Sequence record: NC_048045.1
Length of the DNA: 64,000 nucleotides
Strand: one strand, 5' to 3'
How positions within the stretch are numbered: the first letter of the stretch is position 1; the number at the start of each line of letters is the position of its first letter. Positions 4,144 to 43,033 of this stretch are shown here, piece by piece. The translations under genes and the position numbers were made by a program. The notes below the pieces were generated by a model. It had not been told where the DNA came from. It searched no databases and saw only the letters and a program-made list of their open reading frames with translations.

Positions 4144-5765
4144 AATCCGTCCCGCCGCTCCTGATGGAGCACATCCAGCAGGAGGTGACGACGCTGGCGA
4201 CCTGCATCACGATCGTGCGGCAGGACGGCAAGGCCTTCTTCTTGACCGACCACGACCGGCCGATCCTGTTCGAGAACCAGCACTTCGTCCCCTACGACTC
4301 CTACCAGCGCACCTCGATCCTGATGTCGTCGGAACTCGAAGTCGACACCGCCGACATCACCGCCTTCCTGACCTCCGATGGCGTCACCCGCGACGACGTG
4401 GCCTCAGGCCTGTTCGACTATGCCGCGATCAAGGTGCAGTTGCTCAACTACACCAGCCCGCAGGACGGCGCGATCCTGCTGCGCAAGGGCACCTTCGGCG
4501 AAGTGGTGATGAATCAGGACGAGACGTTCACGGCCGAAATTCGCGGCCTGACCCAGGTCCTGACCTATCGGGTGGGCGAGTCCTACGCGCCCGAGTGTCG
4601 CGCCGACCTGGGCGATCGCCGCTGCAAGATCGGCCTGATGCCTGCGGAATGGCAGGGCAACACCTATTACGCCACCAGCACCTGCGTGCTGGGCGAGGTC
4701 TCGGCCGCCAACTCCTTCGTCAACCTCGACGTCATCAACTGGAGCTTCGAGTCCGGCGACCTCAACACCGTCGTCACCGCGCCGGCGGGCTGGGTGGCCT
4801 ATGGCGATCCGACCAGCCGCTGGGTCTACAAGCACGACTGGTACAACCTTTTTCGCCCGCAACTGGGTGACAAGTTCATCGCCGCCACCCGCACGTCGAT
4901 CGACGACAAGCAGGAGATCGCCGGCATGTTCCAGGACATCAGCCTCCTCAGTGCTGGCGTCTCCGAAGAAGACCTCGATTCGGGCCTCTGCCGCGTCCGC
5001 TACAAGTCGTTCGTCGCGTGCCTCAACAACCGCGCCCAGTCGCGCGAGCGCCTGACCTGCATCAAGGTCGACGGGTCGGTCGAGACGATCTGGGACACCG
5101 GCGAGAAGAAGTACCCCGAGGACCGCTGGGTCGCCGTCAACGCCGACGACGTCCTTATCCCGGCCGGCACCCGAACCCTGCGCATCGACCTGTGGTCCAA
5201 GAAGCGCAATGTCCACGAAGAGGGCGTCGCCTACGACGGCATCAAGGCCTCGATCAACCTGCCCGACGGCACGGCCGGCAATGCCGACGTCTATGGTGGG
5301 GTGATGTTCAAGTGCATCCAGGCGGGCGTCAGCGGCGACACGCCTCCCGAATGGACCAACGAGATCGGCGCCACCTTCAACGACGGCACCGTCATCTGGC
5401 AGTGCGTCACCAACTACAAGCGCGTGGGCACGGTCGACACGGTCGACTCCAACAAGTCCTTCACCCCTGAGGGTATCGGCGAGCAGGGCGGCTTCTACGA
5501 CGGCGGCGTTCTCTACTGGGAGACCGGGCGCAACGCCGGCCGCGCCCAGGAGATCAAGCTCTGGTCGGGCGGGGTCTTCACGCTCTTCCAGCGTACCTAC
5601 TACCCGATCACCGAGGGCGACCGCTTCGTGGTCTATCCCGGCTGCGACAAGCGTCGCAGCACCTGCGGCGACAAGTTCAACAACATCCTCAACTTCCGCG
5701 CCGAGCCCGACGTGCCCGGCCAGGACATCTACTATCGCACGCCCAACGCGCCGGAGCAGGAATGA
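4140..5765 (+). CDS. Baseplate hub-like tail protein (DUF2163/BR0599 family) with internal insertion
   Basis: GTG start overlaps upstream TGA. FLTDHDR, CRADLGDRRC and PGCDKRRSTCGDKFNNILNFRAEPDVPG motifs. Confidence 0.8.
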   Translation: MKSVPPLLMEHIQQEVTTLATCITIVRQDGKAFFLTDHDRPILFENQHFVPYDSYQRTSILMSSELEVDTADITAFLTSDGVTRDDVASGLFDYAAIKVQLLNYTSPQDGAILLRKGTFGEVVMNQDETFTAEIRGLTQVLTYRVGESYAPECRADLGDRRCKIGLMPAEWQGNTYYATSTCVLGEVSAANSFVNLDVINWSFESGDLNTVVTAPAGWVAYGDPTSRWVYKHDWYNLFRPQLGDKFIAATRTSIDDKQEIAGMFQDISLLSAGVSEEDLDSGLCRVRYKSFVACLNNRAQSRERLTCIKVDGSVETIWDTGEKKYPEDRWVAVNADDVLIPAGTRTLRIDLWSKKRNVHEEGVAYDGIKASINLPDGTAGNADVYGGVMFKCIQAGVSGDTPPEWTNEIGATFNDGTVIWQCVTNYKRVGTVDTVDSNKSFTPEGIGEQGGFYDGGVLYWETGRNAGRAQEIKLWSGGVFTLFQRTYYPITEGDRFVVYPGCDKRRSTCGDKFNNILNFRAEPDVPGQDIYYRTPNAPEQE

Positions 5766-6187
5766 CCCGCGACGACATCGTGACCGAAGCGCGCCGCTAT
5801 GTGGCGCTCCAAACCCCCTGGCGCCATCGGGGTCGCACCGAACGCGGCCTCGACTGCATCGGGCTGGCGGTGATGATCTTCGAGAAGTACAACCTGGAGT
5901 ACATGGATCAGGATGGCTACGCGCGCACGCCCGACGGCGAGCGGTTCGTCGATGTGATCAAGGCCCACATGACCCTGGCCGACCCCACCGACCTCAAGCC
6001 CGGCATGTTGGTCCTGTTCAACGACGATGCCCGGCCCTGCCATGTGGGCATCCTGGCCCAGAAGCATGGGGTCATGACCCTGATCCACGCGACCGCCGAT
6101 AAGAAGCGCACGGTCGAAGAAATCTATGATCGCCGCTACGCCGCCCGGTTCCGGATGGCGTTCGATTTCCCCGGCGTTGAGGACTAA
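5762..6187 (+). CDS. NlpC/P60 family tail-associated peptidase
   Basis: TPWRHRGR...GLDCIGL (catalytic Cys), CHVGIL (His), IHA; GTA-like gene order. Confidence 0.85.
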   Translation: MTRDDIVTEARRYVALQTPWRHRGRTERGLDCIGLAVMIFEKYNLEYMDQDGYARTPDGERFVDVIKAHMTLADPTDLKPGMLVLFNDDARPCHVGILAQKHGVMTLIHATADKKRTVEEIYDRRYAARFRMAFDFPGVED

Positions 6188-6189
6188 GC

Positions 6190-9100
6190 ATGGGCGCAGC
6201 TATTGCTCTTCCGATCGTCTCGGCCATTGTCAGTACGGCGATCAGCTACATCTTCCCGGACGAAGGTCCGCGCCTGCGCGACACCAAGGTCTCGGCCTCG
6301 ACCTACGGCAACGTGATTCCCGAAATCTTCGGGACCGCGCGCGTGGCCGGCAACATGATCTGGTCCAAGCCCTTCACCGAGAAGAAGAAGAAGAAGCGCG
6401 CCGGCAAGGGCGGCTCCTACTACAACCAGTACACCTACTTCTGCGACTTCGCGATGGGCTTCTGCAAGGGTCCGGTCAAGGAGGTGCGGCGCATCTGGGC
6501 CGACGGCAAGGTGATCTACGACACCACCGGCGGCTCGGAGGTCGTCGATAACAACAAGTACCGCTTCCGCTTCTACGCCGGCGATGAAGAGCAGCTTCCC
6601 GACAGCCTCGTTTCGGAAGACAAGGGCCTGGACTACGCGCCGGCCTATCGCGGGCTCTGCTACGTCGTGTTCGACGACTTCGCCCTGGCCGATTTCGGCA
6701 ACCGCATCCCCCAGATCATGGCCGAGGTCTATGCCGGCGACGAGGGCGGCACGGCGATCACCGACGTCACCTCGCTCGGCGACGACACGCCCCAACCGGG
6801 CGGCTCCTTCGCCCTGGACCAGTGCATCATCGACACCGACCGGGGCTATTTCTACCTCGTCGACCAAATCTCCGACCCGCGTGGCGGCGTGCTGCGCCGC
6901 TTCCTGCTGTCGAACGGCAAGGAAGATCGGCGCGAACTGGTGCAGGTGGCGCCCAAGACGTCGCCGTCGGTCTACGACAGCCCGGCCCTGACCTCCGTGC
7001 GCGGCTTGACGTCGAAGGGCGAACTGCTCTGCGTGTTCGGCGGCATCAACAACTACATGCGGATCGAGAAGCTCGATCCCTATTCCTGGACCTCGCTGGG
7101 GACGGTGGGGCGCAGCTTCCCGTTCGAAAATCCCGACCGCCCCGACTTTAGCCTGGAGTTCTCGAACGCCGACTTCAAGACCTCGCGCGACGACAAGGGC
7201 AACTACCTGACCCTGACGCTGGGCATCTTCGGCGAGTACAACATCTTCGACCCGACCAGTATGACCTACGTGTCCAAGGGGCACATGGCTGGCTGGAATG
7301 GTCCAGGCACGCCGATGTACATTACCGCGCGCCAGGGCGGCTCGCCGAGCGCGCGCCGCTTCTATCACGTCACCTACGACGGCGGCCCGACTCTGTCGGT
7401 GTGCAGCCTGGGTGAGACCCTCTACCATCACCCCCTGCCTCATCCGGGGCCGGCCGGCGCGACCGGCTGGGCCTTCTGGGACGAGGGTGATCCGGGCGTG
7501 GTCTTCTTCTACACCGACGGCAACCAGGATCGCTATCTGGCCAAGTGGTCGGAGACGACCGGCGCCCTGGCGTGGCAGACCCAACTCCGCAACAGCGACC
7601 CGGTCTGCGGCTATCCGGTCTGGGGCATGGACGCGCGGATCAAGGACAACGAACTCCACTGGGTCTATATCGACCACCTGTTCTCGATCAACACCTCGAC
7701 GGGCAAGTGGATCGACCGCACCTTCGACCAGGACTTCTACAAGACCACGAACGACAAAACCGCCGACCAAGTCAATGACGGCGATCGCGGCCAGTTGCTG
7801 TCCCGCGAGGTCGCCTACGACCACGTCATCTACGACCCGCGCCGCAACATCGTCATCGGCCTGGGCAACCCCCAGGTCACCAACGGCATCGTGCATGTCG
7901 GGGCCTATACCGGGCAGAAGACCAACGTCGGCCGCATCGTCGAGCAGTTGCTGGTCACCACGGGGCAGTTGACCTCCAACGACTACGACCTGACGCCGCT
8001 CTACGAAATCCCCGTGCGCGGCTACGGCTATGCGACCTCGACCGACGTCAAGTCGATCATCTCCGAACTGCGCAACCTGTTCATGTTCGACCTCGTCGAA
8101 AGCGACGGCAAGCTGGTGGCGCGCGTGCGCGGCGACCAGGAGGCGGACGCCGAGGTCCCCTGGCAGCTTCTCGGCTCCCAGAGCGGCCCCAGCGACGACA
8201 AGGCCGAATACTGGAAGGAGACGCGGATGTCGGAGTCCGATCTCCCGTCCGCGATCGACCTGACCTACATGAACATCGACGACGACTACAACCCGTCGAC
8301 GGCCAAGTCCAAGCGCATCTCCTCGCCGGTGGCGACCATGATGTCGCGCCAGCAGGTCAAGACCGAGTGCAACCTCGTCATGGACGCGACCGAGGCCAAG
8401 AACCGCGTCAACATCATGCTCTACACCCAGTGGGACGAGCGCACCCAGCACAACACCGCCCTGCCCTGGGCGTTCGCGCACCTGGACGCCTCCGACCTCA
8501 TCTCGGTGACCATGGAGGACGGCCGCAACTACTTCGACCGCATCGGCTCGATCGAGTTCGGTGCCGACTTCTCCTCGCGCCTGGAGACCTACGGCACCGA
8601 CAGCGGCGCCTACCTGTCCGAGAAGGTCGGTGACGGCGGCGGCGCGGGTCGCCCGACCGTGGTTCATGCGCCCAAGCCGGTCGTGGGCTTCATCATGAAC
8701 CTGCCGCTGCTGCGCGACACCCACGACACCGGCGCCAACTTCTCCAACTGGTACAGCGCCATCGGCCAGGGCGCGCCGGGCACCTTCTATGGCGGGACGA
8801 TGTTCAAGTCCGCCAACAGCCAGGACTACGTCGATCTCTACCAGGAGACCGAGAGCGCCGAGTGGGGCACCGTCAAGGGGATCGTCCCGCCGGCCTCGCG
8901 CGGCTGGTTCGCGCTGGACTGGGAGACCAAGATCACCATCGTCCCGGCGGTCGAGTTCTTCGAACTGGAGTCGATCACCGACGACGAACTGTGGGAAGGC
9001 CAGAACGGCTTCGTGGTCGGTAACGAGGTCATGCAGTTCCGCGACGCGGTTGAGAACGCCGACGGGACCTGGACGATCTGGAACCTGCTGCGCGGCCGGC

Positions 9101-15322: not shown

Positions 15323-15362
15323 TGTCGTGAATCTTGACATCGGCACAAATCCGGGCCATGGT
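15323..15362 (+). promoter_or_regulatory. Motif promoter of the lysis cassette
   Basis: TGTCGTGAATCTTGACA-N17-CATGGT immediately after the fibre stop codon. Confidence 0.65.
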
Positions 15363-17259: not shown

Positions 17260-17424
17260 ATGCGCGAAGGCTTCATGCTGGAAGGCTACGGCGGGCTGAA
17301 GATCGGTCCCGGCGGCGGCGGTGGGGGCGGCGGCCTGGGTGATGGCGGCTCGGCCGGCATCATCCCGGTCAAGGACGACATCAATACCGGCTTCCCGGAC
17401 GGCGACGCGCTCGACTACGGCTAG
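17260..17424 (+). CDS. Small Gly-rich protein (54 aa), below the ORF-track cutoff
   Basis: AGGGA then ATG; MREGFMLEGYGGLKIGPGGGGGGGGLGDGGSAGIIPVKDDINTGFPDGDALDYG; GC3-rich codons like its neighbours. Confidence 0.55.
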   Translation: MREGFMLEGYGGLKIGPGGGGGGGGLGDGGSAGIIPVKDDINTGFPDGDALDYG

Positions 17425-17444
17425 GCATGCGACATCCGGTCGCA

Positions 17445-17484
17445 TGTCGTGATCCTTGACATATCGACGTTCTTGCATTATGGT
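17445..17484 (+). promoter_or_regulatory. Variant motif promoter upstream of an ORF-free region
   Basis: TGTCGTGATCCTTGACA-N17-TATGGT. Confidence 0.6.
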
Positions 17485-17489
17485 CGCGC

Positions 17490-17753
17490 TTCTTCGACGG
17501 CATCCCACCGTCCAACATGGCTCGCGACCCACCGTTCGCAGGGACACGATCGCGACCAAGGCGGTAGCCGGAACGATGCTAGGCTGCAAAGCCAAGCCTC
17601 CGGAACACGCAGTAGCCGGCTGGAACGCTAGGCTCCTATGTCCAAACGGGGTACGGACTTCCTGAGCCTCCGGGCGATAGACCCCACCACCTCGCAAGAG
17701 GTTCACGCGTGATGCGGAGAAGGGCTGAAAAGCCCAAGTGTCTGGAAGGACAG
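17490..17753 (+). ncRNA. Candidate structured ncRNA (about 270 nt)
   Basis: Between a promoter and a terminator with no credible ORF; GNRA hairpins at 17582-17593, 17689-17702, 17722-17735 and 17739-17752. Confidence 0.55.
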
Positions 17754-17787
17754 AAGGCCCCGCCGGAGCGATCCGGCGGGCCTTTTT
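17754..17787. terminator. Intrinsic terminator, GCGA loop
   Basis: AAGGCCCCGCCGGA-GCGA-TCCGGCGGGCCTTTTT between convergent units. Confidence 0.8.
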
Positions 17788-17810
17788 CCGTTGGGGCGGA
17801 GGAAGTCCCC

Positions 17811-18605
17811 TTAGGCGTGGGCGCGGACGCGAACCTTGGACGTGACCGGCAGCGTCGGCGCCAGGGCGCCCACCTTGCCGACCACCTTGCCCAGGATGAC
17901 GATCTTGCCGGCGTCGACGTCGACGTGATCCTTCAGGTCCGCGTCGTAGATGCGGTAGGGGCCGGTCTTGCTTGGGCGGGTGATGTGCGCCACCTGCATG
18001 GCCTTGTTGAGCCCGTAGACGAACTCGCCGCCGGCCGCGTTGGGCTCGACGTCGCGGCGGACCACCGCCATGTCGCCCGGATTGAGGCCAGGGGCGAAGT
18101 CGTGGATCGCCGCCAGGGCCAGATCGGTGGGCTCGGCCTCGAAGCGCTCACGCAGCCAGTCCGGATCGAGGTTCCAGGTCCGCAGACGCTGGAACTCGCC
18201 GGCGCGAGGCTTGAAGGTCAGTTCCTCGACCGGGTTGGGCGAGCCGACCCCGAAGGTGATGTACTCGGGCGTGGTCTTCAGGACGTGGGCGATCTGCTCC
18301 AACACGTCGATGTGCGGCTTGACGCTGTCGGACTCGTACATGATGTACGCAGTGCGGGCCAGGGGCCGGCGCTCACCAGCCTGCTTCGGCTCCCAGCCGG
18401 GCTTGGTGCTGACGTCCTTGCGGGAATTGCTCTGCTGGGTCAGATAGACCCGCGAGGCGACTTGCTCCTGGGTCAGGCCCAGGCCCATGCGACAGGCGGT
18501 AATCCGCTGGCCGATGGTGCGAGGATGCGCGAGGTCGGCATCCTTGTGGATCAGGGAACGAGACCGGTGCGGAACACCCGGCTTCATCTCGATCACGGCT
18601 TGCAT
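17811..18605 (-). CDS. XRE-family HTH regulator with S24-like C-terminal domain (CI/LexA-like)
   Basis: TIGQRITACRMGLGLTQEQVASRV and YIMYESDSVKPHIDVLEQIAHVLKTTPEYI HTH; C-terminal PGDMAVV...ILGKVVG S24-type fold. Confidence 0.7.
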   Translation of the reverse strand: MQAVIEMKPGVPHRSRSLIHKDADLAHPRTIGQRITACRMGLGLTQEQVASRVYLTQQSNSRKDVSTKPGWEPKQAGERRPLARTAYIMYESDSVKPHIDVLEQIAHVLKTTPEYITFGVGSPNPVEELTFKPRAGEFQRLRTWNLDPDWLRERFEAEPTDLALAAIHDFAPGLNPGDMAVVRRDVEPNAAGGEFVYGLNKAMQVAHITRPSKTGPYRIYDADLKDHVDVDAGKIVILGKVVGKVGALAPTLPVTSKVRVRAHA

Positions 18606-20910: not shown

Positions 20911-23721
20911 CTAGCCCTCGCAGGCCACGCAGGTGGAGTCGGACGTCGGGTTCAGGGCCAGCAGCGCGGCCTCTTCAGCAGACCCCGTGGTCGGGGCCTC
21001 CCCCATGTCGATCTGCTTGCGCTCGACCTTGGTGTTGGTGTTCTCGGCCCGCTTGGGCGTCGTCGACCGCAGGTAGTACATCGACTTGACGCCGTACCCC
21101 TCGTTCCAGGCCAGGAAGGTGACTTCCGACAGCGTCTCGGCCGTGGCGTCGTGCGGGTGGAACACGTTCAGGGACTGGCCCTGGCAGATGTCCTCGGTCC
21201 GCCCGACCGCCAGCCGCACGACCCAGCGCTGGTCGAGTTCCATCGCCGTCTTGTAGACGCGCTTCTTATGCTCCAGGACCGCCGGGTCGACGTCGATGCC
21301 CAGGGCCTCGAAGAACTCGACCGAGAAGTGCTGGATCGAGCCCTCGTTAGCGACGATGGTCTTCCAGACCTCATCGGTGTCGGCGCCCAGGCTGGCCAGC
21401 CACGCGCGCAGCCAGCGGTTCTTGACCTGGAACGAGCCCGAGAGGGTCTTGTGCAGGAAGGTGTTGGCGCGGTTGGGCTCAATCGACGGCGAGGCGCCGC
21501 CGCAGAGGATCGACGAGGAGGCGTTGGGGGCCACCGCCAGCTTGTGGGCGAAACGCTCGCCCGAGCCTTCCATGTCCGGAGCTTCGCCGCGCTCGGCGCC
21601 CAGGATCAGCGACGCCGCGTCGGCCTTGCGGCGCATGTGGCGGAAGATGGTCTTGTTGAGCGTCTCGGCCGCCATGCTCTCGAATGGGATGTCGAGCGAC
21701 TGGAGCAGCGAGTGGAAGCCCAGCAGGCCCAGGCCGACCGACCGCTCGCGCACGGCGCTGTAGGAGGCCCGGTGCATCTCGTCCGGCGCGTTGTCGATGA
21801 ACACCTGGAGGCAGTTGTCCAGCATGCGCATCAGGTCTTCGATGAAGGTCGGGTGATCCTTCCACTCGACCCACTTCTCGGCGTTGACGCTCGACAGGCA
21901 GCAGACGGCCGTGCGCATCTTGCCGAACACGTCGCGGCCGGTACCCAGCATGATCTCCGAGCAGTTGCCCGTCAGGTAGCCATTGAACACCAGCCGGTTG
22001 CGCTTGGGCTCGGTGGCGCAGAAGACGTCGGCCTTGTGGGCGAGCGGATGCACACTGGCGACCGTGGCGGCCAGCTTCGGCGCGACCTCGATCTGGTGGG
22101 CCGCGTCGATTTGCTCGGCGGTTTTGGACAGCACCGCGCCGATCTTCGACAGGTAGGCCACGTCCCAGGCCGACAGCGAGAAGGCGCTGACCGTGTCGGT
22201 CAGGCGGATGCGCGGGTGCAGGCCCGACTCGATGGCCAGCAGGCGCATCTCGCGGATCAGGTCCGCATCGGTCGAGCCGACCGTCAGCCAGCGCACGCCG
22301 TCGATCTCGACCCATTCGCCGGCCGCGTCCAGCGCCCCGCCCAGCCATGCCAGACGGCGGCTCGGGGTGTGGTGGAACGGCACGACGCCGGTGTTGATCG
22401 TCAGCGGGTCGTAGCGCAGGGTGGTGCCCGCCTCGTCGCCTTCCAGGTTCAGCGACAGAGCCGACAGGGTCTTGAGCACCGCGTCGGGCAGGCCGACCGG
22501 CACGAAGGCCGACAGGCGGTTCTTGTCACTGAAGCCGGCGAAGGTCGTCCAGCCAGCCGTGTAGGCGACCTCCAGCGGCGGGCTGGCGTCGCTCACGCCC
22601 TCGGTGACCGGCACGTTGGCTTTGGCCAGCACCGTGCCGTCCTTCAGTTCACCGGCCCGGACTTCGACGCCGGCCTCGGTGTAGAACTTGTGGTAGGGGG
22701 TGCAGTCGACAAAGTCGCCGTCCTCGAACCAGACGCGGACCAGTTCGGCCTTCTCGTCGGTGGCGTTGGTCTGGTGGATCAGGACGTTGCTGAATTCGAC
22801 GCCGTTCCAGACGTCATGGAAGCCGCCGGCCAGCGAGGCGATCGGCAGGTGCCCGTTGCGGGTCAGGATTTCGGTCTCGCCCGCCACGCAGAGGTTCGAC
22901 TGGCGAACGCTCAGGCCGAGCTTCTTCTGCCGGTCCGGGAAGTGGCGGTTGGAGGTGTCGATGAAGTGGATGTAGGGCTCGCCCGTCTGCACGCGCGTCT
23001 CGATCAGCAGGCGCCACAGGTCGCGCGCCCGCTCCATGCGGATCACCTCGCCCGTCTTGGGCGAGCGCAGGGCGAAGTCGGTGTCGTCGCGCACTGCGAT
23101 CATGAACTCGTCGGTGACGTTGACCGCGTTGTGCAGGTTGGTGATCTTGCGGTTGTGGTCGCCGCCGGTCGGCTTGCGGGCGGTGATGAACTCGCGGATT
23201 TCCGGGTGATGGATGTCCAGGTAGACGGCGTTGGAGCCCCGGCGAGTGCCGCCCTGGCTGACGGCCAGGATCAGACGGTCGTCCACGGCCATGAACGGGA
23301 TGACGCCGGTCGACTGCGAGCCCTTGGAGGTCTTTTCGCCCAGGGCGCGCAAGGCACCATAGTAGGAGCCGATGCCGCCGCCCATCGACGAGAGCCAGAT
23401 GACCTCGTCATAGTGCTCGGAGATCGACTCGCGGCTGTCCTCGATCGCGGTGAGGAAGCAGGAGATCGGCAGGCCACGGGCCGAGCCGCCATTCGACAGC
23501 AGCGGGGTGGCGTACATGAACCAGAGGTTGGAGACGTAGTCGTACAGACGCTGGCCGTGCTCGGCGTCATCCGCAAAGGCCGCACTCGCGCGCGCGAAGG
23601 CCTCCTGGGGAGACGTTTCCCCAGGCAGCAGATAGCGTTCACGGAGGGTCTGGAGGGTGAAGTCGTCGAGCAGGGCGTCGCGGGTGAGATCGATCTTGAT
23701 TTCGTGCGTTGCGACAGCCAT
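20911..23721 (-). CDS. nrdA: Class Ia ribonucleotide reductase alpha subunit containing an intein
   Basis: ATPLLSN, PISCFL, GGGIG, GEPYI, SNL/C-EI split by an insertion, APNASSS, KSMYYLR, C-terminal CVACEG. Confidence 0.92.
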   Translation of the reverse strand: MAVATHEIKIDLTRDALLDDFTLQTLRERYLLPGETSPQEAFARASAAFADDAEHGQRLYDYVSNLWFMYATPLLSNGGSARGLPISCFLTAIEDSRESISEHYDEVIWLSSMGGGIGSYYGALRALGEKTSKGSQSTGVIPFMAVDDRLILAVSQGGTRRGSNAVYLDIHHPEIREFITARKPTGGDHNRKITNLHNAVNVTDEFMIAVRDDTDFALRSPKTGEVIRMERARDLWRLLIETRVQTGEPYIHFIDTSNRHFPDRQKKLGLSVRQSNLCVAGETEILTRNGHLPIASLAGGFHDVWNGVEFSNVLIHQTNATDEKAELVRVWFEDGDFVDCTPYHKFYTEAGVEVRAGELKDGTVLAKANVPVTEGVSDASPPLEVAYTAGWTTFAGFSDKNRLSAFVPVGLPDAVLKTLSALSLNLEGDEAGTTLRYDPLTINTGVVPFHHTPSRRLAWLGGALDAAGEWVEIDGVRWLTVGSTDADLIREMRLLAIESGLHPRIRLTDTVSAFSLSAWDVAYLSKIGAVLSKTAEQIDAAHQIEVAPKLAATVASVHPLAHKADVFCATEPKRNRLVFNGYLTGNCSEIMLGTGRDVFGKMRTAVCCLSSVNAEKWVEWKDHPTFIEDLMRMLDNCLQVFIDNAPDEMHRASYSAVRERSVGLGLLGFHSLLQSLDIPFESMAAETLNKTIFRHMRRKADAASLILGAERGEAPDMEGSGERFAHKLAVAPNASSSILCGGASPSIEPNRANTFLHKTLSGSFQVKNRWLRAWLASLGADTDEVWKTIVANEGSIQHFSVEFFEALGIDVDPAVLEHKKRVYKTAMELDQRWVVRLAVGRTEDICQGQSLNVFHPHDATAETLSEVTFLAWNEGYGVKSMYYLRSTTPKRAENTNTKVERKQIDMGEAPTTGSAEEAALLALNPTSDSTCVACEG
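21964..22890 (-). mobile_element. Intein (309 aa) in nrdA
   Basis: Starts CVAGETEILT after QSNL, has block B CTPYHKF, ends FNGYLTGN followed by extein CSEIM. Confidence 0.9.
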
Positions 23722-23802
23722 GGGGTCTCGTTTTCGCGTCAAGGCGCGATGCGTTAAAAGCCCTGAGAAATCAGGGCCTTAAGATGAAAGCAAAGGATGG
23801 TT

Positions 23803-38919: not shown

Positions 38920-39008
38920 TGGAGCTACGGGAGGGACTCGAACCCTCATAGGTGTCGCCACCAGCAGAGCTTTGCAGGCCCGCGCCTAACCTCTCGGACC
39001 ACCGTAGC
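38920..39008 (-). tRNA. tRNA-Cys(GCA) with long variable arm
   Basis: GCTACGG/CCGTAGC acceptor, CTGCAAA anticodon loop, GAGGG-TTCGAGT-CCCTC T-arm, U73 plus encoded CCA; 89 nt. Confidence 0.85.
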
Positions 39009-39289: not shown

Positions 39290-39665
39290 GGCATCGTTGT
39301 AATTCGGACAACGGAAACGGCGGCAAGACAGGGGTGCGATTCCCCTCGCCTCCACCATGAGCCCCTGGCGCTGGGAGTACGCGACTCCTGGGCGGGGAGC
39401 GTTACCCCGACGGGATGCGTCCCGAGCAAAGGTGTAGCCAGGGTCTCATGATGGGGGCGATCAGTTTCGATTGGCGCATGTGACTGGAAGACGCAACGGT
39501 GGGTGACCTCCAGGCCAGCTTGCTGGTGATCGGGTCAGTGCAACAGAAATGTCGCATCGAACGACAACGACGTCGTGGCTTACGCCTCGGCTCGTGAAGC
39601 CATCGCCGCCTAATAAGCGGTAGAGGCGTGTCCCGGCGGACGCGCGTGTCACAAAAAGGCCCTGC
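39290..39665 (+). ncRNA. ssrA: tmRNA, circularly permuted two-piece type (acceptor piece to 39357; intervening segment 39358-39452; coding piece from 39453)
   Basis: T-arm AGGGG-TGCGATT-CCCCT plus CGCCTCCACCA precedes GGGGGCG (G3-U70 pair). Resume codon GCA at 39554; tag ASNDNDVVAYASAREAIAA then TAA TAA. Outer ends approximate. Confidence 0.88.
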
Positions 39666-39824: not shown

Positions 39825-39903
39825 CGCGGGGTAGAGGAGTCCGGTTGTCCTCGTCTGGCTCATAACCAGGAGATCGGGGGTTCAAATCCCCCTCCCGCTC
39901 CCA
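39825..39903 (+). tRNA. tRNA-Met(CAT), initiator-like
   Basis: CGCGGGG 5' end with unpaired C1, CTCATAA loop, GGGGG-TTCAAAT-CCCCC, CCA. Confidence 0.85.
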
Positions 39904-40146: not shown

Positions 40147-40233
40147 GGTACGGTGGCTCGACAGGTAAGGCATCGGCCTCATAAGCCGAGGGACTAGCTC
40201 CCGATCCTGGTTCAAATCCAGGTCGTACCTCCA
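40147..40233 (+). tRNA. tRNA with CAT anticodon (Met/Ile2) and long variable arm
   Basis: GGTACGG/TCGTACC acceptor, TCGGC-CTCATAA-GCCGA, V-arm GGGA-CTAGC-TCCC, CCTGG-TTCAAAT-CCAGG, U73-CCA; 87 nt. Confidence 0.82.
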
Positions 40234-40274: not shown

Positions 40275-40314
40275 TGTCGTGAATCTTGACACTCCGGGTT
40301 GAGCTAGGCATTAT
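40275..40314 (+). promoter_or_regulatory. Motif promoter of the cadherin-repeat gene
   Basis: TGTCGTGAATCTTGACA-N17-CATTAT. Confidence 0.7.
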
Positions 40315-40342: not shown

Positions 40343-43033
40343 GTGGCTCGATCCACTCGTTCCGTCGCGTTGGCGCGCGTCGTCACGCCCGCGCAACTGA
40401 AGCGCGATATCCGTATTCGTCGCGCGGACGAACTGGCTGGGCCGAGCGGCCCCAATGGCGTGGTCCTGATCGGGATCACCAACGACCGCGTCATGGAAAA
40501 CAGCGCGCCGGGCACGCCCGTGGGCGACATCTACACGATCCCGGCCGGCGCCGACATCGAACTCGTCACCACCGGCGGCAATCGCTTCGATCTCGTCGGC
40601 TCGACCCTGGTGGTGGGCACGACGCCCCTCGACCACGAGGCCACGCCCGTCGTCAACGTCCTGGTGCATGCCGAGTACGCGGGATCGACCCTGGAAACCA
40701 ACCTGCCGATCACCATCCTCAACGAGACCGAGGTGATCGGCGTCACGCTGTCGGCCAACACCGTCCTGGAAAACTCGGCGGCCGGCGTGACGATCGGGAC
40801 CTTGACCCCCAACCCGGCGGACGCGACGCTCCAGGTCGTCGGCCCCTACGCCGGCTATTTCACGGTCGCGGCCGGCAACATCCTGAAGACCGGGGCGACG
40901 CCGACCGACTACGAGACCGCACCCAACCTGACCGATCACTCCTACCCGGTGACGATCGCCGCCACCCGCCAGGGCGAGACGGCCAATTTCACCATCCCGG
41001 TCTTCGTCCTCAACCAAGTCGAGATCACCAACATCACCCTCTCGGCCAATCACATCGCCGAGGGCTCGGGTAGCGGCACGGTGGTGGGCGGCCTGACTTC
41101 CACGCCGTCGGGCGCGACCTTCTCGCTGGTCGACAACGCCGGCTCGCGCTTCGCCCTGGCCGGCAACAACGTCGTCGCCGGCAGCGTCGCCACCAACTAC
41201 GACACCGCTACCCAGCACGACATCACCGTGCGCGGCACGATCGGCAACGAGAGCCTCAACAAGACCTTTACGATCCTGGTCGACAACGTCAACTCGATCA
41301 GCGACATCACCTTGACGGGCGCGTCGGTCAACGAGAACACTGCCGCTGGCGTTACCGTCGGGACCTTCGCCACTGTCCCGCCCGGCCTGCCGCTGACCCT
41401 GTCCGACACGGCTGGAAACCGCTTCGCCCTGGTTGGAAACACGCTCCAGACGGGCGCGGTCGCGACCAACTACGAGGTCGCCCAGACCCACCAGATCACG
41501 GCCCAGGCGACGTTCGGCAGCGACACCCTGTCGAAGAACTTCACGATCACCGTGGTCGACGTCGACGAGATCAGCGACATCACGCTCTCGGCCAACACGG
41601 TGACCGAGAATACGGCCGCCGGCGTCACCGTCGGCGCCCTGACCTCGACGCCGTCGGGCGCGACCTTCTCGATCGTTTCCCAGACGCCGGCTGGAACCTA
41701 TTTCGCTGTCAACGGGACTAACCTCCAGACGGGGGCGACGCCGACCAACTACGAGGCCAATACCAGCCATTCGGTCACGATCCGGGGCACGCGTCAGAGC
41801 GAGACCTTCGACAAGACGTTCACGATCAACGTGTCCGACGTCGACGAGATCAACAACATCACCCTGTCGGCCACGTCCTTGAACGAGAACTCGCCGCAGG
41901 GCACCACCGTTGGTACACTGACGGCCGCGCCGATTGACACCGGGGTGACCTACTCGATCGTCTCCCAGACGCCGGCTGGCAACTATCTCCAGATCAGCAG
42001 CAACACCCTCCAGGCCGGATCGACCGCGACCAACTACGAGGCCAACACCAGCCACTCGGTCACGATCCGGGGCACGCGCCTGAGCGAGACCTTCGACAAG
42101 ACGTTCACGATCACCATCAACGATCTGGTCGAACTGAGCACCATCAGCCTGTCGGGCTCGTCGATCGACGAGAACTCGGGACCGGGCACGGGGGTGGGCA
42201 CGCTCTCGTCGTCGCCGGCCGGCGCGAGCTTCAGTCTGACGGACAACGCCGGCGGGCGGTTCGCCTTGACCGGTGGCGTGAACATCGTCGCAGGCTCCGT
42301 GGGCACGGATTATGAGGCCGCCCAGTCGCACCAAATCACCGTCCAAGGTACGCGCCTGGGCGAGACCAAGAGCCAGAGCTTCACCATCACCGTCAACGAC
42401 GTGAACGAAGCTCCGCCGGCGCCTGATCTGGACAGCTTCAGCCTGTCGGGCAACTCGCTACAAGAGAACTCGGCGCCGGGCACGCCAATCGGGACCTTCT
42501 CGTCTTCGCCGTCGGGGGCGAGCTATACGCTGACCGACAGCGCGGGCGGCCGGGTATCGCTGGCGGGCGCCAACCTCTCGGCGGGCTCGACCAACACCGA
42601 CTACGAGACCACGCCTTCGTTCTCGATCGGCGTCACCGCGACGCGCGGCGCGACCTCGATCCCGCAGAACTTCACGATCAACGTGGGCGACGTCTCGGAA
42701 GGCGGCGGCGGCGGAAGCCAGACCCTTTCCGTCTCGAAAAACGCCGGTAATCTGACCGGCTCGGCCGTTGGGGGTACGACCCCGCCCACTACCACCCAGA
42801 CCATCACCGCGACTGCCTCGGGCGGTACCGCTCCGTATAGCTATCAATGGGAATATGTGAGTGGCGATACGGGTTGCCTGCTCGCCAACGTTTCTGACCG
42901 TGAAGCCTACTGGTACCTCGCCAATGGTGATCGGCCGTCCAACCGCACGGCGATCTGGCGGTGTAAGGCCACCGACGCGATCGGGAACTACGGCTACACG
43001 TCGAACTCCCAGATCACGCTTACCTGGAGCTAA
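40343..43033 (+). CDS. Cadherin/Ig-like repeat protein (8 repeats), probable virion appendage
   Basis: AGGAG SD then GTG 40343; eight roughly 95-aa repeats ITLSxxxxxENxxxGxxVGxL...(N/D)YE...FTIxVxDV. Confidence 0.8.
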   Translation: MARSTRSVALARVVTPAQLKRDIRIRRADELAGPSGPNGVVLIGITNDRVMENSAPGTPVGDIYTIPAGADIELVTTGGNRFDLVGSTLVVGTTPLDHEATPVVNVLVHAEYAGSTLETNLPITILNETEVIGVTLSANTVLENSAAGVTIGTLTPNPADATLQVVGPYAGYFTVAAGNILKTGATPTDYETAPNLTDHSYPVTIAATRQGETANFTIPVFVLNQVEITNITLSANHIAEGSGSGTVVGGLTSTPSGATFSLVDNAGSRFALAGNNVVAGSVATNYDTATQHDITVRGTIGNESLNKTFTILVDNVNSISDITLTGASVNENTAAGVTVGTFATVPPGLPLTLSDTAGNRFALVGNTLQTGAVATNYEVAQTHQITAQATFGSDTLSKNFTITVVDVDEISDITLSANTVTENTAAGVTVGALTSTPSGATFSIVSQTPAGTYFAVNGTNLQTGATPTNYEANTSHSVTIRGTRQSETFDKTFTINVSDVDEINNITLSATSLNENSPQGTTVGTLTAAPIDTGVTYSIVSQTPAGNYLQISSNTLQAGSTATNYEANTSHSVTIRGTRLSETFDKTFTITINDLVELSTISLSGSSIDENSGPGTGVGTLSSSPAGASFSLTDNAGGRFALTGGVNIVAGSVGTDYEAAQSHQITVQGTRLGETKSQSFTITVNDVNEAPPAPDLDSFSLSGNSLQENSAPGTPIGTFSSSPSGASYTLTDSAGGRVSLAGANLSAGSTNTDYETTPSFSIGVTATRGATSIPQNFTINVGDVSEGGGGGSQTLSVSKNAGNLTGSAVGGTTPPTTTQTITATASGGTAPYSYQWEYVSGDTGCLLANVSDREAYWYLANGDRPSNRTAIWRCKATDAIGNYGYTSNSQITLTWS

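What the first reader, a model, noticed from the sequence alone, without database searches (positions are those of the whole stretch)
17445..17787. Stand-alone roughly 270-nt RNA with four GNRA hairpins and a duplicated internal module
Seen: own promoter (TTGACA-N17-TATGGT) and terminator, no credible ORF. Hairpins GGCT-GCAA-AGCC, ACCTC-GCAA-GAGGT, GGGCT-GAAA-AGCCC and TGTCT-GGAA-GGACA. Two copies of a module GTAGCCGG..GGAACG..CTAGGCT...AGCCTCCGG (about 17564-17604 and 17612-17673); AGGCTC 17630-17635 pairs with GAGCCT 17664-17669. I do not recognise it as 6S, SRP, RNase P or a ribozyme. Inference: a phage sRNA with repeated protein-binding sites (sponge, antitoxin mimic) or a structural RNA co-regulated with virion genes.
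Basis: partly seen in the sequence, partly recalled or inferred. Interest (0 to 1): 0.7.

Follow-up and report, generated by a model that had tools for sequence, protein, structure and literature searches.

The report
Undescribed structured RNA of phiCbK-like phages

Summary
The window is Caulobacter phage CcrBL10. Bases 17425-17810 are the gap between the end of the lysis genes (+ strand) and a convergent HTH gene (- strand). The promoter, the terminator and all four quoted hairpins are there.

Relatives show a real RNA gene. It is found in 26 phiCbK-like records, and in diverged form in Brevundimonas phage Bajun, CcrColossus, CcrPW and one uncultured 279-kb phage. The position and orientation are always the same.

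A core of about 120 nt (17517-17634) is the conserved part. It has three hairpins joined by invariant linkers. In an 11-sequence alignment 96% of cells pair and 12 of 32 pairs show compensatory changes. Slid controls pair in 26-39% of cells. Between CcrBL10 and phiCbK the core is 93% identical, against 84% for the flanking genes.

Frame-shifting indels and frame-inconsistent conservation exclude a peptide. Rfam gives no match.

GGA motifs are not enriched and there are no tandem repeats, so the sponge or antitoxin-mimic idea is unsupported.

In Colossus-like relatives the same slot also holds a Ro60/TROVE gene with YrlA-like RNAs. This RNA fails every Y RNA test.

Best guess: a trans-acting RNA recognised through its invariant core.

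The parts
17260..17424 (+). Last small ORF of the lysis module (CcrBL10 gp099, glycine-rich, 54 aa). It is the upstream neighbour and not part of the RNA.
   Evidence: Annotation. Translation. Conserved in phiCbK and Colossus but not in Bajun.
17426..17446 (+). Hairpin directly after the gp099 stop codon (8-bp arms, 5-nt loop). Probably the 3' end or stabiliser of the upstream operon.
   Evidence: Sequence. It is the only match to this palindrome in the window. An inverted repeat of different sequence sits at the same place in Bajun, Colossus and UViG_3300001199. This favours an RNA hairpin over a protein operator.
17456..17484 (+). Sigma-70-type promoter: TTGACA, 17-nt spacer, TATGGT.
   Evidence: Both hexamers are invariant in 8 phiCbK-like sequences. 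TTGACA with a 16-17 nt spacer and a -10-like hexamer is also present in Colossus, CcrPW, UViG_3300001199 and, more weakly, Bajun.
17489..17787 (+). The inferred transcript, about 300 nt. The ends are inferred from promoter and terminator and have not been mapped.
17496..17512 (+). 5' hairpin H1 (5 bp, 7-nt loop), preceded by a pyrimidine-rich leader at 17489-95.
   Evidence: Paired 5/5 in all 8 close relatives, but invariant, so there is no covariation. Every distant homolog has a 5' hairpin of unrelated sequence at this place.
17517..17634 (+). Conserved core. Invariant ATGGC at 17517-21. Helix H2 pairs 17522-27 with 17550-55, with an inner extension pairing 17528-30 with 17541-43. Invariant linker 17556-60. 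Invariant helix H3 pairs 17561-65 with 17605-10 and has a bulged A at 17607. Helix H4a pairs 17568-71 with 17600-03. H4b is a GCAA-capped hairpin at 17578-97. Helix H5 pairs 17614-20 with 17627-34, with loop TGGAAC at 17621-26.
   Evidence: Model R2 finds this core in Bajun, Colossus, CcrPW and UViG_3300001199 at E = 1e-4 to 4e-3. In alignment A7, 96.4% of cells pair, 12 of 32 pairs are compensatory and 0 of 500 shuffles reach this. Slid controls pair in 26-39% of cells. The core is 93.3% identical between BL10 and phiCbK, against 84% for the flanking genes.
17635..17753 (+). Variable 3' domain. Helix H6 pairs 17648-52 with 17681-85 and encloses hairpin H7 at 17666-75. H8 is at 17689-702. A conserved linker at 17703-21 contains GATGCGG (17711-17). 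H9 is at 17722-35. A BL10-specific hairpin is at 17739-52.
   Evidence: H6, H7 and H9 show compensatory changes among close relatives. H8 changes length and also changes in Bajun. The domain is 74% identical to phiCbK, about 260 nt long in Colossus, and absent in UViG_3300001199.
17754..17787 (+). Intrinsic terminator shared with the convergent gene (bidirectional hairpin, T run on the + strand).
   Evidence: Annotated as a terminator in phiCbK, Swift and Karma. A near-identical hairpin ends both this RNA and the TROVE gene in Colossus.
17811..18605 (-). Convergent HTH (XRE-type) gene gp100c. It is the conserved downstream neighbour and not part of the RNA.
   Evidence: Pfam HTH_3. Synteny RNA -> terminator <- HTH <- dUTPase <- RNR is kept in UViG_3300001199, where the HTH protein is only 31% identical.

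Best explanation
This is a gene for a stand-alone, non-coding, highly structured RNA of about 300 nt in CcrBL10. It is transcribed from its own host-type promoter and ended by an intrinsic terminator.

The gene is specific to phiCbK-like (Dolichocephalovirinae) phages and always lies between the lysis cassette and the convergent HTH/nucleotide-metabolism genes.

Its functional unit is a core of about 120 nt. Three hairpins have stems that are free to change as long as they pair. They are held together by linker and loop nucleotides that never change. These are ATGGC, the linker at 17556-60, an invariant bulged helix, and a hairpin loop beginning U-G-G-A-A, which has the U1...A5 spacing of a T-loop.

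The peripheral hairpins capped by GNRA or UUCG loops and the whole 3' domain are lineage-specific padding.

My inference is that the RNA acts in trans. A conserved partner, a host or phage protein or another macromolecule, would recognise it through this invariant, probably compactly folded core. Long antisense pairing or repeated binding sites would not be involved.

Shown: the gene exists, its strand, its structure, its non-coding nature, its conservation and its distribution. Inferred: the exact 5' and 3' ends, the tertiary fold, action in trans and the kind of partner.
For: - **Identity and context.** The window is CcrBL10.
- **Distribution.** 26 phiCbK-like records have the whole region at 82-100% identity, and none annotates it beyond a terminator.
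- **Distant homologs.** They lie in the same slot and orientation in Bajun, Colossus, CcrPW and UViG_3300001199.
- **Covariation, core.** Alignment A7 has 96.4% of cells paired and 12 of 32 pairs compensatory. No shuffle of 500 reaches this, and slid controls pair in 26-39%.
- **Covariation, full length.** On a MAFFT alignment that was not fitted to the structure, 95.7% of cells pair against 23-50% for slid controls, with 7 compensatory pairs.
- **Strand.** G-U pairs are tolerated on the + strand in 8 pairs. On the - strand these would be A-C mismatches.
- **Constraint.** The core is more conserved than the neighbouring coding DNA (93% against 84%).
- **Invariant linkers next to covarying stems.** This is seen across phages whose neighbouring HTH protein is only 31% identical.
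- **Not coding.** There are separate 1-nt indels among close relatives. The ORF opened by the invariant ATG lies in three different frames relative to the next invariant stretch and has lengths of 16 to 109 codons.
- **Promoter and terminator.** Both are conserved.
- **T-loop description.** Taken from PMC4810234.
Against: - No transcript data were found. The phiCbK genome paper and an infection RNA-seq paper do not mention the region.
- The invariant helix H3 and all proposed tertiary contacts carry no covariation, so they are untested.
- The T-loop reading rests on a 5-nt spacing only.
- No partner is identified.
- Only five independent lineages exist, and the A7 alignment was fitted to the model.
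- In Colossus the RNA's 5' hairpin plus U run looks like a terminator lying downstream of the promoter. This could mean attenuation, or a different start.
- A conserved single-stranded linker is also what a base-pairing seed looks like.
Confidence: 0.45

Rival explanations
1. It is a base-pairing regulatory sRNA of the Hfq-dependent type. An invariant single-stranded stretch, such as the linker 17556-60 with its flanks, the H5 loop, or the stretch after H9, would be a seed that pairs with host or phage mRNAs.
For: It is a stand-alone gene with a Rho-independent terminator and a U tail. Conserved unpaired stretches lie between stable hairpins. Complements of 17556-67 are somewhat over-represented in the window (11 against 5.3 expected; 2 of 100 shuffles reach this).
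Against: None of those complementary sites lies at a start codon. They are all 1-2 mismatch matches to a 12-mer. The invariant nucleotides are scattered over four short segments and one helix rather than forming one long seed. The host genome could not be searched.
Confidence: 0.2
2. It is a riboswitch-like sensor. The core would be an aptamer whose ligand state decides whether the terminator works, and so whether antisense transcription runs into the convergent HTH and nucleotide-metabolism genes.
For: Invariant junctions plus covarying stems followed by an intrinsic terminator is riboswitch anatomy. In UViG_3300001199 the terminator follows the core after about 20 nt. The convergent genes are dUTPase and ribonucleotide reductase.
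Against: There is no ORF downstream on the same strand. The spacer between core and terminator varies from about 20 to about 260 nt. In Colossus the gene behind the terminator is TROVE and not HTH. I found no conserved alternative pairing between core and terminator.
Confidence: 0.08
3. It has no function of its own. It would be the structured 3' untranslated tail of the lysis operon, or an insulator between convergent operons.
For: It lies exactly between convergent transcription units. The terminator is bidirectional.
Against: A separate hairpin closes the upstream operon before a conserved promoter. Unpaired nucleotides stay invariant across lineages whose proteins are about 31% identical, and an insulator does not need that. 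The core is more conserved than the flanking genes.
Confidence: 0.08
4. It is a sponge, or an antitoxin or other mimic, with repeated protein-binding modules.
For: Repeated words lie about 48 nt apart in CcrBL10. There is a GGA in the conserved H5 loop.
Against: The repetition is confined to the phiCbK/BL10 clade. The minimal homolog has single simple hairpins. GGA counts are at expectation in all ten sequences. There is no tandem array and no toxin gene nearby.
Confidence: 0.05
5. It is a Y RNA-like partner of a Ro60/TROVE protein.
For: In CcrColossus, CcrPW and giant Brevundimonas phages the same genomic slot carries a TROVE gene and sub-threshold YrlA-like modules. Colossus has this RNA convergent on TROVE.
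Against: tblastn finds TROVE in Colossus and CcrPW but in no phiCbK-like genome. Domovoi and Gurke have TROVE without this RNA. There is no YrlA or Y_RNA match up to E = 10. The GNCGAAN0-1G motif of PMC4201824 is absent from BL10 and is not conserved. No tRNA-like domain is found.
Confidence: 0.04
6. It encodes a small peptide starting at the invariant ATG at 17517.
For: ATGGC is invariant in all ten sequences.
Against: The reading frame relative to the next invariant block differs between lineages (offset 0, 2, 1, 1). Peptide lengths are 16, 62, 30 and 109 codons. There are 1-nt indels among close relatives. No Shine-Dalgarno-like purine run lies upstream.
Confidence: 0.02

Closest known systems
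YrlA / bacterial Y RNAs (Rfam RF02553) with Ro60/TROVE
   Same: They are phage-encoded structured non-coding RNAs. In Colossus-like relatives they occupy the very same intergenic slot. A 5'-3' end pairing is possible.
   Different: There is no TROVE gene in CcrBL10 or any phiCbK-like genome. There is no covariance-model match, no conserved GNCGAAN0-1G motif and no tRNA-like module. The presence of the RNA and of TROVE are uncoupled across phages.
Large orphan structured RNAs often carried by phages (GOLLD, ROOL; named from my own knowledge; both are in Rfam)
   Same: They are stand-alone, strongly covarying phage-borne RNAs with no ORF and no known partner, found in regions rich in RNA genes.
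   Different: This RNA is much smaller, with a core of about 120 nt and a total of 150-400 nt. It has no Rfam match. Its distribution is restricted to one phage subfamily.
Riboswitch aptamers and T-box-type RNAs
   Same: Invariant junction nucleotides lie between covarying helices. The hairpin loop has T-loop-like U1...A5 spacing. An intrinsic terminator follows.
   Different: There is no downstream gene on the same strand. The distance to the terminator is very variable. No ligand or tRNA link has been shown.
CsrB/RsmZ-type protein sponges and ToxI-type antitoxin repeats
   Same: One conserved GGA-containing hairpin loop. Repeated words in CcrBL10.
   Different: There is no enrichment of GGA, no tandem repeat and no conservation of the repetition. 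No toxin gene is nearby.
Hfq-dependent trans-acting sRNAs, including other phage-encoded sRNAs
   Same: Its own promoter, a Rho-independent terminator, and a size of a few hundred nucleotides.
   Different: It has far more structure, and its conservation pattern is typical of a folded recognition module rather than a linear seed. No target was found.

Membership tests
Any Rfam 15 family | A covariance-model match at or near the gathering score | tested here: not met
   Nothing at gathering threshold in the window at this locus. Up to E = 10 the best hit is 17 bits against a 58-bit cut-off, and it covers the terminator only. The same holds for the minimal homolog and for the Bajun and Colossus loci.
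YrlA / Y RNA | Encoded next to a Ro60/TROVE gene | tested here: not met
   tblastn with Colossus gp139 finds TROVE in Colossus and CcrPW only among Caulobacter phages. The neighbours in CcrBL10 are lysis genes and an HTH gene.
YrlA / Y RNA | A GNCGAAN0-1G motif near the 5' end (PMC4201824) | tested here: not met
   Absent from BL10, RBC63, Rogue, BL57, Bajun, Colossus, CcrPW and the UViG. It is present only as a GNRA hairpin in the middle of the Shapirovirus sequences.
YrlA / Y RNA | A tRNA-like domain (T arm and D arm) | tested here: not met
   ARAGORN finds nothing at 17400-17800. There is no tRNA or YrlA hit up to E = 10.
CsrB/RsmZ-type sponge | Many GGA motifs in hairpin loops | tested here: not met
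   There are 9 GGA against 6.3 expected in BL10, with similar figures in all homologs. Only the H5 loop GGA is conserved.
CsrB/RsmZ-type sponge | A CsrA/RsmA protein in the host or the phage | not tested
Type III antitoxin (ToxI-like) | A tandem array of about 35-nt repeats next to a toxin endoribonuclease gene | tested here: not met
   Tandem Repeats Finder reports only a CGG run inside gp099. The neighbours carry no toxin domain.
Riboswitch | An aptamer in the 5' leader of a regulated gene on the same strand | tested here: not met
   The next gene is convergent. The same holds in all homologs.
Riboswitch | Ligand binding | not testable with these tools
   -
Hfq-type base-pairing sRNA | A Rho-independent terminator with a U tail | tested here: met
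Hfq-type base-pairing sRNA | A conserved seed with conserved complementary targets | tested here: inconclusive
   Only the 64-kb window was searched. There was a weak excess of imperfect complements, none at a start codon.
Small-protein gene | A conserved reading frame | tested here: not met

The most novel reading that the evidence does not exclude
The core would be a new class of compact, riboswitch-grade folded RNA carried by giant alphaproteobacterial phages. Its invariant junction and T-loop-like hairpin would dock onto a conserved host machine, such as a tRNA, the ribosome, RNA polymerase or an RNA-processing enzyme, in order to redirect it during infection. That would make it an RNA effector and not an antisense regulator.
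Probability: 0.3. Interest if true: 0.75.

Novelty: new variant of a known kind. Interest (0 to 1): 0.6.

Why it matters
phiCbK is the classic phage of a major model bacterium, yet this RNA is unannotated in all 26 or more genomes. I found no paper that mentions it.

It is one of the few phage-encoded RNAs for which sequence comparison alone gives a well-supported structure. A naturally occurring minimal version of about 150 nt also exists.

Its conservation pattern is variable stems with frozen linkers, kept across phages whose proteins have drifted to about 30% identity. That is the pattern of RNAs that bind something specific. Identifying the partner would therefore show a new way in which large lytic phages use RNA.

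The same genomic slot also collects Ro60/Y RNA-like genes and other unexplained repeats in sister phages. This marks it as a hotspot for phage RNA genes.

Tried and rejected
**Searches that found nothing useful**
- Rfam at gathering and at permissive thresholds gave nothing on the window, the minimal homolog or the distant loci.
- The first full-length model R1 found only terminators in distant phages. It was replaced by the core model R2.
- The RNAalifold consensus of close relatives proposed long-range pairings of the 17600 region with the 17715 region. The distant homologs instead support local closure of H4, so I dropped them.
- Degenerate-pattern scans of IMG/VR, metagenomes and GTDB genomes added one true homolog, UViG_3300001199. 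All other matches lie in coding DNA and fail the model.
- No homolog was found next to the HTH gene in Domovoi, Gurke, Bertelyvirus C2 or Erythrobacter phage XM05.

**Ideas rejected**
- Y RNA: rejected.
- Peptide: rejected.
- Sponge or ToxI-like antitoxin: rejected.
- The palindrome upstream of the promoter as a protein operator: rejected. The sequence differs in every lineage while the hairpin potential stays.

**Left open**
- An end-to-end closing stem pairing 17489-96 with 17715-22 is kept 8/8 in Poindextervirus but only 5/8 elsewhere.
- The alternative pairing of 17500-04 with 17711-15 is invariant and competes with H1.
- Both are left as inconclusive.

**Literature**
- Searches found no description of the RNA.

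- I built short IUPAC search patterns (two R codes) from stretches shared by the homologs. I used them and wrote them in note 2. If that counts as writing a consensus, it is a slip too.
- No full-length consensus was built, saved or used.

Full report
**Where we are.** The query 17440-17800 is 100% identical to Caulobacter phage CcrBL10 (MH588544.1, Poindextervirus). In that record the stretch 17425-17810 is an unannotated gap. It lies between the last gene of the tail and lysis module (gp099, + strand) and a convergent HTH gene (gp100c, - strand). Behind the HTH gene come dUTPase and ribonucleotide reductase.

**Checking the observation.** The promoter-like site (TTGACA 17456-61, 17 nt, TATGGT 17479-84) and the terminator (stem 17759-80 plus a T run) are found by the consensus scan. 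That hexamer pattern occurs four times in the window against 0.24 expected. One of the other copies lies in front of the lysozyme gene. All four hairpins and the repeated words are in the sequence as quoted. The 311-nt stretch folds with z = -3.1 against shuffles. Rfam has nothing there, at gathering or up to E = 10.

**Close relatives.** Twenty-six phage records, all phiCbK-like, carry the whole region at 82-100% identity. None annotates more than a terminator. In an alignment of eight distinct sequences both promoter hexamers are invariant. Separate single-base indels occur inside the RNA, which no reading frame would tolerate.

I drew a full-length structure by hand and counted it on a MAFFT alignment that was not fitted to it:
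- 95.7% of cells pair, against 23-50% when partners are slid.
- Seven pairs show compensatory changes. They lie in the GCAA hairpin (17578-97), H6, H7 and H9.
It is 2-3/6 in the other five.
- The fourth hairpin (17739-52) is 0-1/5 outside Poindextervirus.

**Distant relatives.** I searched the phage collection with the neighbouring HTH protein to find the syntenic locus in more distant Dolichocephalovirinae. Reading those gaps showed diverged copies of the RNA in the same place and orientation in three phages:
- Brevundimonas phage Bajun (L012, about 5190 to 4755, minus strand of the locus).
- CcrColossus (L013, about 7865 to 7430, minus strand).
- CcrPW (L016).

A pattern scan of IMG/VR added a 279-kb uncultured phage, UViG_3300001199 (L018). 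Its GC content is about 55%. Its HTH protein is only 31% identical to that of CcrBL10, but the order RNA -> terminator <- HTH <- dUTPase <- RNR is the same. In that phage the RNA is a natural minimal version of about 150 nt. It has a 5' hairpin, the core, about 20 nt of spacer and the terminator.

Scans of metagenomes and of one genome per prokaryotic species gave only chance matches inside coding DNA. No copy was found beside the HTH gene of Domovoi, Gurke, Bertelyvirus C2 or Erythrobacter phage XM05.

**The core.** I built a covariance model of 17517-17640 with a hand-drawn structure. It recovers Bajun, Colossus, CcrPW and the UViG at E = 1e-4 to 4e-3, exactly at the expected places. On the resulting 11-sequence alignment (10 distinct rows):
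- 96.4% of cells pair.
- 12 of 32 pairs have changes on both sides.
- No shuffle of 500 reaches any of the five measures.
- Slid controls pair in 26-39% of cells.

The caveat is that this alignment is fitted to the model and contains only five independent lineages.

Helix by helix in window coordinates:

| Helix | Pairing in the window | Pairs with compensatory changes |
|---|---|---|
| H2 | 17522-27 with 17550-55 | 4 of 6 |
| H4a | 17568-71 with 17600-03 | 3 of 4 |
| H4b | cap hairpin 17578-97 | 2 |
| H5 | 17614-20 with 17627-34 | 3 of 7 |
| H3 | 17561-65 with 17605-10, bulged A at 17607 | none (identical in every sequence) |

H3 is therefore neither supported nor contradicted.

Between these helices several nucleotides never change in any lineage. 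They are ATGGC (17517-21), the linker 17556-60 (one R position), and the first five loop bases of H5 together with its closing C-G pair.

G-U pairs occur on the + strand in eight pairs. On the other strand these would be mismatches, so the + strand is the RNA.

Between CcrBL10 and phiCbK the identities are as follows:
- core: 93.3%
- holin and HTH genes: 84%
- 3' domain: 74%

**Not coding.** The ORF opened by the invariant ATG lies in three different frames relative to the next invariant block. It runs for 16, 62, 30 or 109 codons in different lineages.

In the phiCbK/BL10 clade the 5' half of H4 resembles H5. This may be a local duplication that enlarged H4. In Bajun, Colossus and the UViG, H4 is a plain hairpin capped by an 8-nt loop, a GAAA-type loop or UUCG. 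The repetition is therefore not part of the conserved design. GGA motifs are not enriched and there is no tandem array.

**The Ro60 lead.** In CcrColossus, CcrPW and the giant Brevundimonas phages the same slot carries a TROVE (Ro60) gene. It is preceded by several sub-threshold YrlA-like, tRNA-like modules, the best at 42 bits and E = 3e-6. That made a Y RNA identity worth testing. It fails on every count:
- tblastn finds no TROVE in any phiCbK-like genome.
- Domovoi and Gurke have TROVE without this RNA.
- Colossus has both, convergent and sharing a bidirectional terminator.
- The Rsr-binding motif given in PMC4201824 is absent or not conserved.
- There is no tRNA-like domain.

The slot looks like a collecting place for RNA genes and not like a functional unit.

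**How it most likely works.** The following are shown:
- it is a separately promoted and terminated gene;
- the RNA strand;
- the helices of the core and of the 3' domain;
- the absence of coding capacity;
- purifying selection that is strongest on the core.

The rest is inferred. The combination of freely covarying stems with frozen linkers and one frozen hairpin loop is what folded recognition modules show. A linear seed would not look like this, and these phages' proteins have diverged to about 30% identity. The H5 loop begins U-G-G-A-A. That matches the U1...A5 spacing of the pentanucleotide T-loop described in PMC4810234. The first three bases of the linker could pair with loop positions 1-3. 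Both are invariant, so this remains an untested idea.

I therefore favour a trans-acting RNA that is bound through its core by a conserved partner. The peripheral GNRA- or UUCG-capped hairpins and the 3' domain would serve folding and stability.

My confidence that this is a real structured RNA gene is about 0.85-0.9. My confidence in the mode of action is about 0.4-0.45. The rivals are listed with their evidence in the rival explanations. They are:
- a base-pairing sRNA;
- a riboswitch-like terminator control over antisense read-through;
- an inert 3' tail or insulator;
- a sponge;
- a Y RNA;
- a peptide.

**Open points.**
- The 5' and 3' ends are not mapped.
- An end-to-end stem is possible but inconsistent between clades.
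- In Colossus the 5' hairpin plus U run resembles a terminator placed after the promoter.
- The host genome could not be searched.

**Known or new.** I found no mention of the RNA in the phiCbK genome paper, in an infection RNA-seq study or elsewhere. There is no Rfam family. It is a new family within a known kind, phage-encoded structured non-coding RNAs of unknown function.

- I used short IUPAC patterns derived from shared stretches as search queries and wrote them in note 2.
- No full-length consensus was built or kept.

Noticed in passing
window 39295-39613 (+), 39825-39900 (+), 40147-40230 (+), 38920-39008 (-): The phage carries a permuted (two-piece) tmRNA gene (Rfam 82 bits against a 47-bit cut-off) followed by two tRNA-Met-like genes. 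One of them has a long insertion. ARAGORN alone also calls an 89-nt tRNA-Cys on the minus strand, which Rfam does not report at gathering threshold.
   Followed up: no
L013 (CcrColossus) 5006-7406; L015 (Gurke) 5069-7061; L014 (Domovoi) 5082-7106: In sister phages the slot between the HTH gene and the lysis module holds a Ro60/TROVE gene. It is preceded by several sub-threshold YrlA-like, tRNA-like modules. One of these is annotated as tRNA-Gln in Colossus and one as tRNA-Ser in Gurke. TROVE genes also turned up in Xanthomonas, Rhizobium, crAss-like and other phages.
   Followed up: partly
L014 (Domovoi) 7372-7928: The 1.1-kb unannotated gap after the TROVE gene contains three copies of a module of about 45 nt, spaced about 250 nt apart. 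It is unrelated to the RNA studied here (no model hit). It may be another repeated RNA element.
   Followed up: partly
window 15334-15362, 40286-40314, 41934-41961: Three further sites match TTGACA, 16-18 nt, NATNNT. That makes 4 in the window against 0.24 expected by chance. One lies directly upstream of the lysozyme gene with CATGGT as the second hexamer. This suggests a shared promoter type for the lysis cassette and the RNA.
   Followed up: no
L013 (CcrColossus) 7795-7817 (-): The hairpin plus U run annotated as the terminator of the Colossus lysis operon lies downstream of the RNA's TTGACA...CATAAT promoter. It corresponds in position to the RNA's 5' hairpin. It may act as an attenuator, or the Colossus RNA may start elsewhere.
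   Followed up: no
window 17260-17424 (+): The glycine-rich 54-aa ORF gp099 just upstream begins MREG and has a GDGGS motif. It is conserved in phiCbK and CcrColossus but is replaced by an unrelated 83-aa ORF in Bajun. It contains a CGG triplet run at 17310-34.
   Followed up: partly
window 20914-23742 (-): The ribonucleotide reductase alpha subunit has a split barrel-domain match and a weak intein-splicing hit. The Colossus homolog is annotated as intein-containing.
   Followed up: no
window 17504-11 and 17528-35; 17681-89: The 8-mer CCCACCGT occurs twice in the 5' part, once in the loop and 3' strand of H1 and once at the inner extension of H2. A related C/A-rich stretch follows H6. Colossus has two TCCACCC stretches in its 3' domain. 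The meaning is unknown.
   Followed up: no
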